DNA of 64,000 bases, from the IMG/VR virus record IMGVR_UViG_3300042402_002641, positions 1 to 64,000 of that record; one strand, written 5' to 3'. A program made the translations under genes and the position numbers. The notes beneath the pieces were generated by a model, which ran no database searches, was not told the origin of the DNA, and saw nothing but the letters and a program-made list of their open reading frames with translations. Of this stretch, positions 25,477 through 27,657 are shown piece by piece (within the stretch, counting starts at the first letter, position 1; each line of letters starts with the position of its first letter).

Positions 25477-25685
25477 GGAAGGTCGCTGCGACCCCAACCA
25501 ATATTATTCCAAACTCTTTCATGAATAAAGTACAGGATTGTATTGCACACTAATTGTATTGCAGCGATAATACCGGAGACTGTAAAGTTACCCGATATGC
25601 TATAGGCAATTATAAATGTCGCACCGGATCCTGTGATTCTCCAAGATATAGTTTTTACAAGACTACGTCTAGCAGTATCACTCAA
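25473..25685 (-). CDS. DUF2061-type membrane protein
   Basis: RSLVKTISWR..LYFIHERVW. Confidence 0.85.
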   Translation of the reverse strand: MSDTARRSLVKTISWRITGSGATFIIAYSISGNFTVSGIIAAIQLVCNTILYFIHERVWNNIGWGRSDLP

Positions 25686-26538
25686 GTCCTAAATCCTTGC
25701 GAATTTTTGTAGCACTAATATCTGTTACTGTTTCGTCGAATGATTCTTCACCTGAAGTATATCCTACTCCACGACCCCATCCAATATGCACAATATTAGG
25801 AACTACTTGAATCTCATATTGTCCTTGATATATAGGATCTAAATCACGTTTGATAAATGATTTTACCTGTTCAATAGCAAATGGATTGCTACCTTGCCAG
25901 CCTTGCACATCTCGAACTTGAATGACTACTTGGCCGGTTTTTGCTATTAAGCGTTCGAACAATGCACGATGTCCATCATGCCAAGGTTGCCAGCGACCTA
26001 ACATCTGCACAGTTTCTTTTTGCCAATCAAATGCAGGACGTCTACGATTGGTCAATATGTGATCTCCGATAAATTCTGCCCACTTTTCTGCATTTTGTTC
26101 AGTAACTCGGAAATCATAAACTTCTGGTTCAACGAATGCTGCATTAGTATCAGCATATCGGCTTTCACGGATAGTATCCACCCAAATTGTCCAATCTGCT
26201 TTAAAGTTATTACGCATTTCAACCAATGGTGCGACAAAATCACAGATAACATATTCACCCGAACATTCTAAAGAAAACTGGAGCATGCGCAGACTCTGGC
26301 GAATTCTACCTTCTTTTGAAAAATCCCAATCGTTGAATTTTCTACGAACATCGTCGGCATTGAACCAATCTACTCCTATCTTGAAAAACTCAGGACCCGG
26401 AATACCTTCATAGTTAGATATTTTTTGGGGATTAATTTTCATTAAATCACCATTTGTTTCTAAATAATTTTTTAGAGCCTGTGCAAGATATGTTTTACCG
26501 CTGCCGGGCAATCCCATTATTAAAATCCTAGATGGCAT
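25678..26538 (-). CDS. APS-kinase-like domain fused to HxGH nucleotidyltransferase domain
   Basis: GLPGSGKT, NADDVRR, DFSKEGRIRQ; C-terminal GRWQPWHDGH and ISATKIR. Confidence 0.8.
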   Translation of the reverse strand: MPSRILIMGLPGSGKTYLAQALKNYLETNGDLMKINPQKISNYEGIPGPEFFKIGVDWFNADDVRRKFNDWDFSKEGRIRQSLRMLQFSLECSGEYVICDFVAPLVEMRNNFKADWTIWVDTIRESRYADTNAAFVEPEVYDFRVTEQNAEKWAEFIGDHILTNRRRPAFDWQKETVQMLGRWQPWHDGHRALFERLIAKTGQVVIQVRDVQGWQGSNPFAIEQVKSFIKRDLDPIYQGQYEIQVVPNIVHIGWGRGVGYTSGEESFDETVTDISATKIRKDLGLE

Positions 26539-26588
26539 AATATTTCCTTTAAACTTATAATATATAGCTAAAAATTTTAGGTAATCAT

Positions 26589-26617
26589 AAAAAAAGACTA
26601 CCGAAGTAGTCTTTTTT
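26589..26617 (-). terminator. terminator of the cspA-tmRNA transcript
   Basis: aaaaaagactac-cgaa-gtagtctttttt (UUCG loop on minus strand). Confidence 0.85.
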
Positions 26618-26998
26618 GGTTGTTTTGTTTACAAGGTATTTCCTACCCCGGACCTGCTGTTTTTTAGGCAGCTAGAGCAAATCTGCTTTCATTAGCAGCA
26701 CCGCGAACGGTGTTACCAGTGAAGCTCATTGCGCTAAAGTCGAATGTATCTGCGTTTGCATTTACGAGTTTTGCTTGATTTACGGTCATCGCCTACCGTG
26801 TTGCCGTCTCTATTATCTCACCCTGTCGAAACCATGGCAGGCCCATCATAAAAGGACTAGAGCAAATACTACAGTAACAATAATAAAGCCAACTAATGTG
26901 CTATATTCGTTATCCATACTAATCTCCTTATGGTGGACCTGGCGGGAGTCGAACCCGCGTCCAGAATGCCTTCACTTTGAAGGGATTACAACAATTTC
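26618..26998 (-). ncRNA. ssrA: tmRNA, circularly permuted two-piece form: acceptor piece ~26998-26931, coding piece 26844-~26618
   Basis: T-arm GCGGG-TTCGACT-CCCGC and CAGGTCC-A-CCA lie upstream of 5' GGGCCTG..TTCGAC; 7-bp acceptor stem with G3:U70; tag ORF 26759-26664 ends FALAA*. Confidence 0.92.
26846..26917 (-). CDS. 23-aa hydrophobic peptide inside the tmRNA intervening segment
   Basis: TAAGGAG RBS 6 nt upstream; MDNEYSTLVGFIIVTVVFALVLL*. Confidence 0.65.
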   Translation of the reverse strand: MDNEYSTLVGFIIVTVVFALVLL

Positions 26999-27202
26999 TT
27001 AGGCGGGCTGAATATTACTAGCCTGCTGTCCTTTCTGACCCTGAGTTACTTCAAACCTTACACTCTGTCCTTCTTGTAGGCTCTTGAAGCCACTCGAATT
27101 AATCTGTGAAAAGTGAGCAAATAAGTCTGCGCCACCATCGTCCGGAGTAATGAATCCAAAACCTTTGGCGTCGTTAAACCATTTTACTTTTCCTGTTACC
27201 AT
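26999..27202 (-). CDS. cspA: cold shock protein
   Basis: [19 protein letters not shown]. Confidence 0.96.
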
Positions 27203-27246
27203 TTTACTTAATTTCCTTGTTGTTAAAAAGATGCTGTCTCTGTGTG

Positions 27247-27657
27247 TTATTTAATCCAACCTATGCGTTTTCCCGCAGTTATTCGGCGATCATATTCCTC
27301 GACTGAACTAGGAAATCTCCATGCCCAAACTGCCACGCACAACATAAACAGTGCTGTATATATTATACCACGAACGGGCACTGAAGTCAACCACATGATC
27401 ACCAAACTGGTTGACATCATGAACAGCATGAAATATTTCATTTTCTGCGGGAACACTCTTTTGGTGTTCCAATTTGTGAGAAATGGTCCAAACAACCGGT
27501 GATTGTAGATCCAACGATGCATGCGTTCTGAACCCTTTGAGAAACAGTAGGCCGCGAACACCACAAATATGCTGTAGGGTATGCCAGGGGTAATGACTCC
27601 TATGTAGGCCATACCTAGACTTAGGAATCCCAACGCATTCCAGAATAATTTTTTCAT
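27247..27657 (-). CDS. DUF454/YbaN family membrane protein
   Basis: [27 protein letters not shown]. Confidence 0.85.

What the first reader, a model, noticed from the sequence alone, without database searches (positions are those of the whole stretch)
26618..26998. Circularly permuted (two-piece) tmRNA in a phage
Seen: the T-arm and CCA end (26931) precede the 5' GGGCCUG (26844) on the minus strand; acceptor stem is perfect with G3:U70; the tag ORF and a terminator follow; the gene sits directly behind cspA. Established: permuted tmRNAs occur in alphaproteobacteria, some picocyanobacteria and a few betaproteobacteria. Phage examples are easily missed or miscalled.
Basis: seen in the sequence. 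Interest (0 to 1): 0.75.

Follow-up and report, generated by a model that had tools for sequence, protein, structure and literature searches.

The report
Phage two-piece tmRNA carrying mini-gene
A 280-kb lake-water phage carries a genuine circularly permuted (two-piece) ribosome-rescue RNA gene, a kind already known from phages, but the spacer that is cut out between its two pieces holds a small protein-coding gene, an arrangement I could not find described.

Summary
ARAGORN calls a permuted tmRNA, and Rfam tmRNA_permuted (143.7 bits, cut-off 47) and beta_tmRNA (135.7, cut-off 84) match. The CCA end at 26931 precedes the GGGCCUG at 26844 on the minus strand. The acceptor stem pairs 7/7 with G3·U70. 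A 31-aa tag frame (…RFALAA) and an intrinsic terminator follow, and cspA lies directly upstream. The genome is a 280-kb IMG/VR phage with a terminase and no integrase or SmpB.

An independent DNA contig spans the permuted junction. Lake metatranscriptome contigs cover both pieces but not the spacer.

Phage two-piece tmRNAs are already published, so the core finding is a new member of a known kind. Three features go beyond that:
- The type is phage-specific. Its 24-nt 5' end occurs in at least 119 viral contigs and in none of 185,579 species genomes.
- The long tag is under peptide-level selection.
- The 86-nt spacer is a Shine-Dalgarno plus a 23-codon hydrophobic ORF that fills the gap. In relatives the same slot holds a plain hairpin or one of more than 20 unrelated ORFs, including a thioredoxin.

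Translation of the spacer ORF and processing into two pieces are inferred, not shown.

The parts
27362..27390 (-). Candidate sigma-70-type promoter (TTGACT-17-TATAAT, TG-extended) upstream of cspA. It is the possible start of a cspA-tmRNA transcript.
   Evidence: This is a consensus match only (11/12), and the number of promoter-like sites in the region is no higher than in shuffles. Inferred.
26999..27202 (-). cspA-like cold-shock protein gene (67 aa). Its stop codon lies 6 nt before the acceptor piece.
   Evidence: PHROG 729, E 5.6e-23. A CspA gene lies directly upstream of the tmRNA in 46 related viral loci.
27002..27027 (-). Hairpin at the very end of the cspA coding region. It may form a protective 3' end for cspA mRNA once the tmRNA is cut off.
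   Evidence: An inverted repeat of 9 pairs was reported, listed on the + strand. The role is inferred.
26931..26993 (-). Acceptor piece (about 62-63 nt): 5' strands of helices P2c/P2b/P2a, the T-arm (26958-26942), the 3' acceptor strand (26941-26935), discriminator A and an encoded CCA (26933-26931).
   Evidence: Rfam alignment, sequence and covariation. A 62-nt metatranscriptome contig matches 26931-26992 exactly at depth 104.
26845..26930 (-). Intervening sequence (IVS, 86 nt), absent from the mature RNA. Its ends pair to form a stem that stacks on the acceptor stem.
   Evidence: Fold at -33.5 kcal/mol, z -3.2. Depth is zero at 26855-26891 in three RNA runs, against 18.5 in a DNA run. In near-identical relatives this is the only segment replaced.
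26924..26929 (-). Shine-Dalgarno AAGGAG, starting 1 nt after the CCA end and lying 6 nt before the ATG.
   Evidence: AAGGAG with a 6-7 nt spacer is the strongest RBS type in this genome.
26846..26917 (-). IVS ORF of 23 codons plus TGA, encoding MDNEYSTLVGFIIVTVVFALVLL, a predicted single-pass membrane peptide. The stop codon ends 1 nt before G1 of the coding piece.
   Evidence: The family has 19 unique variants (21-24 aa) in 26 loci, all in frame to the same stop. Variable columns by codon position are 27/11/41.
26590..26844 (-). Coding piece (about 255 nt): 5' acceptor strand GGGCCUG (26844-26838), D-loop analogue UGGUUUCGAC, 3' strands of P2a/P2b/P2c, the PK1 hairpin (26798-26783), the tag frame, a hairpin and the terminator.
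   Evidence: RNA-run depth reaches hundreds to thousands over 26744-26854.
26664..26759 (-). Tag reading frame: resume codon GCA, tag ANADTFDFSAMSFTGNTVRGAANESRFALAA, stop UAA.
   Evidence: ARAGORN. Twelve unique 96-nt variants differ 52/82/350 at codon positions 1/2/3, which indicates peptide-level selection.
26590..26617 (-). Intrinsic terminator (12-bp stem, UUCG loop, U-run). Homology with related phages ends here.

Best explanation
This is a functional ssrA gene of a lytic jumbo phage, in the circularly permuted (two-piece) form and of the beta-proteobacterial structural type.

The minus strand is probably transcribed together with cspA and ends at the terminator at 26617-26590. In the precursor the 3' acceptor strand (26941-26935) pairs with GGGCCUG (26844-26838), and the 86-nt spacer closes into a stem-loop.

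Host RNase P would cut 5' of G26844, and host tRNA 3'-end maturation would trim to the encoded CCA at 26931. That yields a roughly 62-nt acceptor piece and a roughly 255-nt coding piece, held together by the acceptor stem and helices P2a-c.

Host AlaRS would charge the RNA through G3·U70 and A73. Host SmpB and EF-Tu would deliver it to ribosomes stalled on broken mRNAs, since the phage encodes no SmpB. Translation would resume at GCA 26759 and add a 31-aa tag ending ALAA, which marks the product for host ClpXP-type proteolysis.

For the phage, this most likely keeps ribosomes available while host RNA is degraded and host ssrA supply falls. It sits next to an RNA chaperone gene, so the two may act as a translation-maintenance module.

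The excised spacer is not junk. It is a compact SD-ORF-stop unit encoding a 23-aa membrane peptide, and it sits in a slot that holds different small genes in related phages.

Shown here: sequence and structure membership, covariation, peptide-level selection on the tag and the spacer ORF, the DNA arrangement, and the presence of both pieces but not the spacer in community RNA.

Inferred: processing enzymes, charging, SmpB use, translation of the spacer ORF, and the benefit to the phage.
For: - Identity: ARAGORN permuted call and Rfam scores far above cut-offs.
- Structure: perfect acceptor stem with G3·U70, A73 and encoded CCA. Nine covarying acceptor-stem versions. P2a, P2a' and the T-arm are about 100% canonical with compensatory changes.
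- Tag: third-position-biased variation of 52/82/350, with length variants all multiples of 3.
- Arrangement and expression: the DNA contig spans the junction, and RNA contigs cover both pieces at high depth with zero depth on the spacer.
- Phage identity. No integrase.
- Not a recent host capture: the 24-nt 5' end occurs in at least 119 viral contigs and in 0 of 185,579 species genomes, and bacterial relatives form a separate clade.
- Spacer ORF statistics: 26 of 83 unique spacers carry a sense-strand SD plus an ORF filling the gap, against 0 antisense and a mean of 0.39 in shuffles.
- Real genes in the slot: a thioredoxin (PF00085, 75.4 bits) occupies the slot of a near-identical tmRNA. A 68-aa family is always found in the same CCA|SD-ORF-stop|G1 context. 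Fourteen more families of up to 133 aa were found.
- The window's own peptide family shows a coding signature.
Against: - There is no direct evidence of aminoacylation, SmpB binding or tagging.
- The RNA evidence comes from assembled contigs of lake metatranscriptomes. Conserved tmRNA segments are shared by many phages there, so contig ends may be graph branch points rather than RNA ends, and the window's own phage may be rare in those samples.
- No dedicated promoter was found. The one upstream of cspA is only a consensus match.
- The host is unknown, so compatibility with host SmpB and AlaRS is assumed.
- The second stem of pseudoknot PK1 and helices P2b and P2c could not be verified by covariation.
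- The predicted fold buries the spacer's SD in a stem, which could limit translation.
- A 23-aa ORF cannot be confirmed by homology to any characterised protein.
Confidence: 0.85

Rival explanations
1. The RNA is made but acts mainly as a decoy that titrates host SmpB or blocks host trans-translation, rather than rescuing ribosomes and tagging proteins. This is the role proposed for the tRNA-like-domain-only molecule of mycobacteriophage DS6A.
For: The phage has no SmpB of its own. A TLD-only phage form is reported to inhibit tmRNA (PMC4131195; PMC11915505).
Against: The complete tag frame is retained and evolves under peptide-level constraint: 52/82/350 by codon position, in-frame length variants, and an ALAA terminus kept throughout. 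That is hard to explain unless the frame is translated.
Confidence: 0.07
2. It is a non-functional remnant of host ssrA, either picked up by imprecise excision or serving as an attachment-site duplicate.
For: tmRNA genes are frequent integration sites, and ssrA fragments occur in prophages (PMC9004378; PMC4383910, listed).
Against: The gene is complete, there is no integrase in the genome, and the exact 5' 24-mer is absent from 185,579 species genomes. The gene is conserved with covariation in more than 150 viral contigs, and bacterial relatives form a separate clade at 68-76% identity.
Confidence: 0.03
3. The tmRNA is real, but the spacer ORF is not expressed as protein. The SD-like sequence and the open frame would then be by-products of the processing stem and of AT-rich sequence.
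For: - The first bases after CCA (UAAGG) pair with the last bases before G1 in the predicted fold, so part of the 'SD' is structurally required.
- Hairpin-only spacers begin with a similar UAAAG.
- The spacer has zero depth in RNA contigs.
- A 23-codon frame is short.
Against: - Spacer-filling ORFs with an SD are 26/83 on the sense strand, 0 antisense, and 0.39 in shuffles.
- The slot holds a bona fide thioredoxin in a near-identical tmRNA and proteins of up to 133 aa.
- The window's peptide family keeps its frame across four length classes (66, 69, 72 and 75 nt) and varies least at codon position 2.
- AAGGAG-6 nt-ATG is the genome's strongest RBS type, and the hexamer is under-represented overall.
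Confidence: 0.22
4. The permuted order is an assembly artefact, or the contig is bacterial contamination.
For: None found. The record is a single metagenomic contig with a CheckV completeness estimate of 79%.
Against: An independent DNA run yields a contig across 26814-26972 with no differences. More than 150 other viral contigs and five cultured phages show the same order. Terminase and other phage genes are present.
Confidence: 0.01

Closest known systems
Beta-type two-piece tmRNA of Rhodocyclales (Dechloromonas, Azonexus, Thauera, Accumulibacter; Rfam RF01850; lineage of Sharkady & Williams 2004 as cited in PMC9004378)
   Same: It is the best Rfam clan match. Gene order, T-arm, G3·U70 acceptor stem, P2 helices and resume context UAAAUGCAAAC are the same. 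The last ten residues of the tag, ANESRFALAA, resemble the bacterial ANDERFALAA.
   Different: - Bacterial genes form a separate clade at 68-76% identity.
- Their spacer is a 23-42 nt hairpin without an ORF.
- Their CCA is usually not fully encoded (ACCC).
- Their tag is 10 aa.
- Here the CCA is encoded, the spacer is 86 nt with an SD and an ORF, and the tag is 31 aa.
Two-piece tmRNAs of marine myophages (Methylophilales phage Melnitz, Pelagibacter phage Mosig; PMC9004378)
   Same: A phage-borne permuted ssrA in a lytic phage without SmpB. An extra element is embedded in the gene: there a glutamine riboswitch, here an ORF.
   Different: Those are alpha-type and marine, and the embedded element is a riboswitch in the 3' domain. 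No protein-coding spacer is described.
One-piece phage tmRNAs (mycobacteriophage Bxz1 group, Bacillus phage G) and the TLD-only form of phage DS6A (PMC4131195)
   Same: Phage-encoded ssrA that presumably relies on host SmpB.
   Different: Those have the standard gene order or lack a tag frame. Here the gene is permuted and has a long tag.
Intron-form tmRNA genes whose T-loop group I intron may carry a homing-endonuclease gene, and a permuted tmRNA with a tRNA-Ala gene in its intervening sequence (PMC11915505)
   Same: A second gene is nested in the part of a tmRNA gene that is removed from the mature RNA.
   Different: There is no group I intron here (no Rfam intron match). Removal is by tRNA-type end processing, not splicing. 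The cargo is small proteins of many unrelated kinds, not an endonuclease or a tRNA.
tRNA-punctuated transcripts, in which mRNAs are released by RNase P and RNase Z cuts at flanking tRNAs, as in animal mitochondria (from my own knowledge)
   Same: The ORF is bounded on both sides by tRNA-type processing sites, with almost no untranslated sequence.
   Different: Here both flanking 'tRNA ends' belong to one permuted RNA. Release of the mRNA by this route has not been shown.
Small hydrophobic peptides of type I toxin-antitoxin systems (Ibs, ShoB, TisB class; from my own knowledge)
   Same: The peptide is about 20-30 aa with a single hydrophobic helix, and its SD is predicted to be sequestered by long-range pairing in the primary transcript.
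   Different: No antisense RNA was identified, no sequence similarity could be tested at this length, and no toxicity data exist.

Membership tests
tmRNA, circularly permuted form (Rfam RF04321; beta type RF01850) | Covariance-model score above the curated gathering threshold over the full model | tested here: met
   RF04321 scores 143.7 bits against 47 over model positions 1-213. RF01850 scores 135.7 against 84 over positions 1-331.
tmRNA, circularly permuted form | In gene order, the T-arm, 3' acceptor strand and CCA lie upstream of the 5' acceptor strand | tested here: met
   The CCA ends at 26931 and G1 is at 26844 on the minus strand. The order is confirmed in an independent DNA contig.
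tmRNA (any form) | A 7-bp acceptor stem with G3·U70 and discriminator A73 (AlaRS identity) | tested here: met
   GGGCCUG pairs with CAGGUCC, followed by A. Nine covarying stem versions keep G3·U70 invariant.
tmRNA (any form) | T-arm with a GUUCGAnUC-type T-loop and the D-loop analogue UGGUUUCGAC | tested here: met
   T-arm pairs are 101/101 canonical with compensatory changes.
tmRNA, two-piece | Helices between the acceptor piece and the coding piece (P2 series) hold the pieces together | tested here: met
   P2a and P2a' are 100-101/101 canonical with several pair types. P2b and P2c pair in the window (one mismatch in P2b), but covariation across the MAFFT alignment was inconclusive.
tmRNA (any form) | A tag reading frame with an alanine resume codon, a hydrophobic C-terminus (..LAA) and an in-frame stop | tested here: met
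   GCA at 26759, 31 aa ending FALAA, UAA stop. Codon-position bias is 52/82/350.
tmRNA (any form) | Pseudoknot PK1 upstream of the resume codon | tested here: inconclusive
   The hairpin at 26798-26783 fits the model. A 4-bp second stem (GCGA with UCGU) can be drawn by eye, but covariation was not resolved.
tmRNA, two-piece | The precursor is processed into two RNAs lacking the intervening sequence | tested here: inconclusive
   RNA contigs cover both pieces, including a 62-nt contig at exactly 26931-26992, and give zero depth at 26855-26891, while DNA depth there is 18.5. These are assembled community data, not mapped ends.
tmRNA (any form) | Alanylation, SmpB and EF-Tu binding, and trans-translation activity | not testable with these tools
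   This needs biochemistry or genetics.
trans-translation system | The partner protein SmpB is encoded in the same genome | tested here: not met
   No PF01668 match in the 280-kb record. This is expected for phages, which would use the host's SmpB, and the record is estimated to be 79% complete.
Rhodocyclales (beta) two-piece lineage in the strict sense | Nested within the bacterial clade, with a short hairpin spacer and a 10-aa tag | tested here: not met
   The bacterial sequences form their own clade (support 0.90) with no phage sequence inside. Their spacer is 23-42 nt and their tag 10 aa, against 86 nt and 31 aa here.
Intron-form tmRNA | A group I intron in the T-loop | tested here: not met
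   The T-loop is uninterrupted and no intron family matched.
Type I toxin-like small membrane peptide (for the spacer ORF) | A short hydrophobic peptide, a sequestered SD, a cis or trans antisense RNA, and toxicity | not tested
   Only the first two features are seen. No antisense RNA was searched for and toxicity is unknown.

The most novel reading that the evidence does not exclude
In a large, phage-specific clade of permuted tmRNA genes, the intervening sequence has become an expression slot for small proteins.

The same RNase P cut and CCA-end maturation that create the two tmRNA pieces would release a minimal mRNA running from the base after CCA to the base before G1, consisting only of SD, ORF and stop. 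The slot is hypervariable between otherwise near-identical phages. It holds a hairpin only, membrane peptides such as the window's 23-mer, a thioredoxin, or proteins of up to 133 aa.

This would be a protein gene nested in, and processed out of, a ribosome-rescue RNA gene. Its expression could be coupled to tmRNA maturation. In the variants whose ORF lacks a stop before G1, the released mRNA could even be a built-in substrate for tagging.
Probability: 0.4. Interest if true: 0.8.

Novelty: new variant of a known kind. Interest (0 to 1): 0.62.

Why it matters
Why phages carry their own ribosome-rescue RNA is unresolved. This locus belongs to an abundant freshwater phage clade in which three features depart from the cellular relatives: an encoded CCA, a 22-32 aa tag under peptide selection, and a spacer that carries genes.

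If the spacer ORFs are translated, they would be a new way of packaging and expressing small proteins, delimited by tRNA-processing sites inside an RNA gene. They would also be a class of small proteins that annotation pipelines treat inconsistently. JGI and ENA call some of them 'hypothetical protein' without recognising the surrounding tmRNA.

On the practical side, unannotated permuted tmRNAs were found in cultured phages of Pseudomonas aeruginosa, Xanthomonas, Acinetobacter and Alcaligenes. As far as I know, the gammaproteobacterial hosts among these have the standard one-piece tmRNA. These phages give laboratory systems in which the role of a phage tmRNA can be tested by deletion.

Tried and rejected
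- Literature searches for 'two-piece tmRNA' or 'permuted tmRNA' with phage, for tmRNA with intervening sequence and ORF, for huge or jumbo phages with tmRNA, and for 'phage/viral tmRNA'. These established that phage two-piece tmRNAs are known. They found no description of protein ORFs in the spacer. Two hits (PMC5746245, PMC8541194) concerned unrelated introns.
- The original paper on the beta lineage (PMC516066) is not held.
- My first regular expressions mis-parsed the bacterial spacers, giving 3-4 nt artefacts, and missed four cultured phages. I replaced them with complement-based parsing.
- Covariation for P2b, P2c and the PK1 hairpin was inconclusive on a structure-blind MAFFT alignment. 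I did not hand-type a long structure string for the pair-counting tool.
- Host inference was not possible.
- A search for phage-encoded partners (SmpB, ClpP, SspB, RF-1/ArfB, Lon) found none.
- A 290-aa gene preceded by 'ACCA-AAAGGAGATTAGTATG' turned out to have no tRNA-like element upstream, so it is an ordinary RBS.
- An 8-nt direct repeat, ACAGCAGG, flanks the gene at about 27031 and 26659. I judged it too short to interpret.
- Pfam and PHROG gave no function for most spacer proteins apart from the thioredoxin.
Full report
**Observation**

ARAGORN finds one tmRNA in the window, flagged as permuted, at 26573-27023 on the minus strand, with the tag ANADTFDFSAMSFTGNTVRGAANESRFALAA. Rfam gives two matches above curated thresholds. 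tmRNA_permuted (RF04321) scores 143.7 bits against 47 over the whole model. beta_tmRNA (RF01850) scores 135.7 bits against 84 and is the best member of the tRNA/tmRNA clan.

Reading the minus strand gives this layout:
- The acceptor piece starts at about 26993.
- The T-arm is GCGGG-UUCGACU-CCCGC (26958-26942).
- The 3' acceptor strand CAGGUCC (26941-26935) is followed by A and an encoded CCA ending at 26931.
- After 86 nt, the coding piece begins with GGGCCUG (26844-26838). It pairs 7/7 with the 3' strand and has G3·U70.
- The tag frame runs from GCA 26759 to UAA 26664.
- A 12-bp terminator hairpin with a U-run lies at 26617-26590.
- A 67-aa cold-shock protein gene (27202-26999; PHROG 729, E 5.6e-23) ends 6 nt before the acceptor piece.

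**Is it a phage, and is the order real?**

The window is the first 64 kb of a single 280,019-bp IMG/VR virus record with 41.8% G+C and a CheckV completeness estimate of 79%. The record contains:
- ribonucleotide reductase subunits, a DNA ligase, tail-like proteins and several phage-only PHROG families;
- a large terminase at 124.4 kb;
- no integrase;
- two tRNAs besides the tmRNA, Met-cat and Arg-tct at 69.5 kb.

Sequencing-run look-up places the phage in lake-water metagenomes. In an independent DNA run, one contig covers 26814-26972 without a single difference. That stretch takes in the start of the coding piece, the entire spacer and the end of the acceptor piece. The same order recurs in more than 150 other viral contigs. 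Misassembly is excluded.

**Structure support from relatives**

The exact 24-nt start of the coding piece occurs in at least 119 IMG/VR contigs of 4-383 kb. ARAGORN calls a permuted tmRNA in 109 of the 124 loci scanned at that point, 119 from this scan plus five cultured-phage loci.

Across 155 loci, including bacterial and cultured-phage examples, the acceptor stem exists in nine versions: GGGCCUG, GGGGGUG, GGGCCAG, GGGCCCG, GGGGCUG, GGGCGAG, GGGCGUG, GGGGAUG and one GGGGGUG/CAUCUCC variant. Each pairs 7/7 with its own 3' strand. G1-C, G2-C, G3·U and G7-C never change.

In 101 unique sequences, the two helices that join acceptor piece to coding piece next to the tRNA-like core (P2a, P2a') and the T-arm are 100-101/101 canonical with several pair types per position. 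One position, for example, shows A-U 42, G-C 42, C-G 9 and G-U 7. The outer helices P2b and P2c and the PK1 hairpin pair in the window, with one mismatch in P2b. They could not be assessed on a structure-blind alignment.

**Expression evidence**

Three lake metatranscriptome runs, kept as assembled contigs, were laid on 26300-27400:
- Summed contig depth is hundreds to thousands over 26744-26854 and up to 379 over 26929-26965.
- Depth is zero over 26855-26891 in all three RNA runs. The DNA run is even across that stretch (18.5, against 15.5-20 in the flanks).
- One RNA contig is 62 nt long, has depth 104 and matches 26931-26992 exactly, which is the predicted acceptor piece.
- Contigs specific to the long tag region (26656-26763) are present at depth 10-23.
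- A contig bridging cspA and the acceptor piece exists at depth 3.8.

This is what processing into two pieces with loss of the spacer would give. However, the conserved segments are shared by many phages in these samples, contig ends can be graph branch points, and DNA carry-over cannot be excluded. I rate it as supportive, not decisive.

**What is already known**

Permuted tmRNAs are established in Alphaproteobacteria, a betaproteobacterial group and Cyanobacteria. Phage examples are on record. Buchholz et al. 2022 found tmRNA genes in 402 of 18,146 phage genomes, with 133 unique structures, of which ARAGORN called 53 two-piece, mostly marine. They describe an alpha-type two-piece tmRNA with a glutamine riboswitch in phage Melnitz (PMC9004378).

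The 2025 tmRNA database paper built RF04321. It mentions a tRNA-Ala gene and a repetitive element inside intervening sequences, but no protein genes (PMC11915505). Earlier surveys listed only one-piece phage forms and the TLD-only DS6A molecule (PMC4131195).

**Relation to cellular tmRNAs**

The exact 24-mer is absent from one genome each of 185,579 bacterial and archaeal species. A degenerate pattern retrieves the beta two-piece lineage, including Azonexus, Dechloromonas, Thauera, Accumulibacter and Rhodocyclaceae MAGs, with 10-aa tags of the form ANDE[QR]FA[ILV]AA. Their spacers are 23-42 nt simple hairpins, and the CCA is usually not fully encoded, reading ACCC.

On the tRNA-like domain plus 75 nt, the window is 68-76% identical to them. 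In a FastTree tree, which is unrooted, the 16 bacterial sequences group together with no phage sequence among them (support 0.90). The phage genes are structurally beta-type but are not a recent capture from any sampled species.

**Unannotated examples in cultured phages**

A distant BLAST search matched only the acceptor piece in several GenBank phages. ARAGORN and Rfam (111-124 bits) show complete permuted tmRNAs in five of them:
- Xanthomonas phage XacN1
- Pseudomonas phage UF_RH6 (Samunavirus; PaMx31, SM1 and others match too)
- Alcaligenes phage vB_Af_QDWS595
- Acinetobacter phage BUCT628
- Xanthomonas phage JGB6

None of them is annotated in its record. As far as I know, the gammaproteobacterial hosts among these have one-piece tmRNAs.

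**The tag**

Tag lengths in the phage clade are bimodal. There are 37 tags of 10 aa (for example ANDEQFALAA) and about 60 of 22-32 aa. The window's 31-aa tag is shared exactly by five other loci that differ at the nucleotide level (L017, L039, L045, L103 and L116).

Twelve unique 96-nt variants differ at codon positions 1/2/3 by 52/82/350 in pairwise counts. Related length classes are 81, 84, 87 and 96 nt, all multiples of three. The counts are not phylogenetically independent, but the third-position excess is large. The long frame is evidently translated and constrained as a peptide, including its N-terminal ANADTFDFSAMSFTGNTV part.

The first 12 residues resemble the complete 12-aa tag of XacN1 (ANANTFDYALAA). 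The last ten (ANESRFALAA) resemble the bacterial ANDERFALAA. I infer that an ancestral stop was lost and a second tag-like unit now supplies the ALAA degron. What the conserved N-terminal part binds is unknown.

**The intervening sequence**

In the window the 86 nt between CCA and G1 read:
- U, then AAGGAG (26929-26924);
- six bases, then ATG (26917);
- 23 codons, then TGA (ending 26846);
- one U, then G1.

The product, MDNEYSTLVGFIIVTVVFALVLL, is a short acidic head followed by a 17-residue hydrophobic stretch. AAGGAG with a 6-7 nt spacer is the strongest RBS type in this genome. The hexamer is otherwise under-represented, with 100 copies on both strands, at least 13 of them in front of long ORFs.

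The arrangement is not peculiar to the window. Among 83 unique spacers of the GGGCCUG class, 26 have an SD and a start within 30 nt of CCA and an ORF of at least 15 codons whose stop lies within 15 nt of G1. None does on the antisense strand, and 500 shuffles give a mean of 0.39 and a maximum of 5.

The window's peptide family has 19 unique nucleotide variants (21-24 aa) in 26 loci, attached to tmRNAs with different acceptor stems. ORF lengths of 66, 69, 72 and 75 nt all stay in frame with the same TGA. Variable alignment columns fall 27/11/41 on codon positions 1/2/3.

Other spacers encode unrelated products:
- four further families of 19-26 aa hydrophobic peptides;
- proteins of 38-84 aa;
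- with a second SD context (TAAGGAAGUUU-AUG), 52 complete ORFs, of which 38 are followed at +1 nt (31) or +13 nt (7) by the 5' acceptor strand that matches their own 3' strand. These give 29 unique proteins in 14 families of 45-133 aa.

One cargo is an unmistakable thioredoxin (PF00085, 75.4 bits, WCGPC motif). It sits in a tmRNA whose two pieces and 31-aa tag are nearly identical to the window's (RF04321 136 bits). A tmRNA with a 133-aa ORF still scores 119 bits.

A 68-aa cargo protein has five homologue clusters in the public protein collection at 78-88% identity, called 'hypothetical protein' by JGI and ENA. The three contexts I fetched place it again between CCACCA|UAAGGAA… and …UGAU|GGGCCUG. 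One carries an in-frame one-codon insertion.

**The slot is hypervariable**

A CspA gene lies directly upstream of the tmRNA in 46 related loci. Among the 30 loci whose CspA is at least 94% identical to the window's, the spacer is either a 53-61 nt hairpin or one of at least nine unrelated ORFs.

Pairwise comparison with the closest relatives shows 92-99% identity through cspA, the acceptor piece and the coding piece. Non-homology is confined to about 26926-26847, and homology ends at the terminator at 26587.

Hairpin-only spacers begin UAAAG… and end …CUUUAUAAU. ORF-bearing ones begin UAAGGAG… and end …CUUUUAUGAU. The conserved stem that flanks the processing sites is therefore retained, and the cargo sits in its loop. 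In the window the predicted fold pairs the SD region with the last bases of the ORF, stacked on the acceptor stem (-33.5 kcal/mol, z -3.2).

**Mechanism**

Established knowledge of two-piece tmRNA maturation (Keiler et al. [quoted passage not shown] On that basis I propose, as an inference:
1. The gene is co-transcribed with cspA. The only promoter-like site is at 27390-27362 and is a consensus match only.
2. RNase P cleaves at G26844.
3. 3' maturation trims to the encoded CCA at 26931.
4. Host AlaRS charges the RNA, and host SmpB is used. The phage has no SmpB, ClpP, SspB, ArfB-type or Lon gene.
5. Trans-translation adds the 31-aa tag.

The likely benefit is to keep ribosomes free during infection. 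The conserved pairing with an RNA-chaperone gene in cold lakes fits a translation-maintenance module, but this is conjecture.

For the spacer ORF there are two routes. It could be translated on the precursor, or from the excised spacer. In the second case the mRNA would consist only of SD, ORF and stop. I cannot distinguish the two. The zero RNA depth over the spacer argues that, if released, it is short-lived.

**Verdict**

The bare finding is a new member of a known kind. The gene-bearing spacer, the long selected tag and the phage-specific clade make it a new variant of a known kind. I found no prior description of the spacer ORFs in the library available to me, which does not cover subscription journals.

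Noticed in passing
L002 (XacN1 AP018399.1 ~36.9-37.4 kb), L003 (UF_RH6), L004 (QDWS595), L005 (BUCT628), L006 (JGB6): Five cultured phages carry complete permuted tmRNA genes (ARAGORN tmRNA*, RF04321 111-124 bits) that their GenBank records do not annotate. In two of them a 'hypothetical protein' CDS is drawn over part of the gene. Their spacers are 26 to about 115 nt with no obvious ORF.
   Followed up: partly
L004:1177-1253 (Alcaligenes phage QDWS595) and L002:2589-2747 (XacN1): Suppressor-type tRNAs sit beside the phage tmRNAs. In QDWS595 a tRNA with anticodon UUA (Rfam tRNA 41.6 bits) overlaps the 3' end of ARAGORN's tmRNA call. In XacN1 there are two tRNAs with anticodon CUA.
   Followed up: no
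L008, L018, L023, L024, L068, L098, L120, L121, L123, L125 (101-nt spacer class): The commonest single spacer encodes MKYTALCP[SN]CF…HKCFSD, with Cys/His spacing like a zinc ribbon. It has no stop before G1, so the frame runs 8 or more codons into the coding piece. If RNase P cuts at G1, the released mRNA would lack a stop codon and would itself be a trans-translation substrate.
   Followed up: no
L034, L048, L052 (79-nt spacers); L041, L050, L079, L118: Some ORF-less spacers contain T-arm-like segments (GGTTCGAGTCC, GGGTTCGATTCC), suggesting small tRNA-like structures inside the spacer. PMC11915505 reports a full tRNA-Ala in one spacer.
   Followed up: no
L280:6370-6477 and downstream to the coding piece: A 36-aa hydrophobic ORF directly after CCA is followed by more sequence containing another ATG before the coding piece. 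This spacer may hold two ORFs. The tmRNA there scores 115 bits.
   Followed up: no
L280:10928-11336 (IMG/VR contig of 286 kb): A GOLLD RNA (RF02032, 160 bits, cut off at the locus end) with embedded and neighbouring tRNAs lies about 4 kb from a permuted tmRNA in another lake jumbo-phage contig.
   Followed up: no
L300:159-203: There is a COG2908 RNA motif match (RF02939, 70.9 bits) about 2 kb upstream of a tmRNA whose spacer encodes a 133-aa protein.
   Followed up: no
window 26587 (and 26999-27001): Homology with the closest relatives (L103, L039) stops exactly at the end of the tmRNA terminator, and the downstream kinase-like gene (25678-26538) is not shared. Several relatives also have an extra 70-90 nt between cspA and the acceptor piece. 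The tmRNA gene therefore sits at a mosaic boundary.
   Followed up: partly
window 27024-27031 and 26652-26659: An 8-nt direct repeat, ACAGCAGG, flanks the tmRNA gene, once inside the cspA 3' end and once just after the tag stop. It is too short to interpret.
   Followed up: no
L289, L283, L293, L295, L313, L315, L316, L318, L324: The most frequent long cargo is a 122-aa protein family containing a …GKGLGKILI… motif that recalls acetyl-CoA-binding motif A of GNAT enzymes. Pfam gave no significant match (only HTH_45 at E 0.009), and L289 gave no RF04321 hit at gathering threshold despite having both flanking acceptor strands.
   Followed up: partly
genome G000:C1:69473-69646: The 280-kb phage carries only two tRNAs, Met-CAU and Arg-UCU, adjacent to each other and far from the tmRNA.
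   Followed up: no
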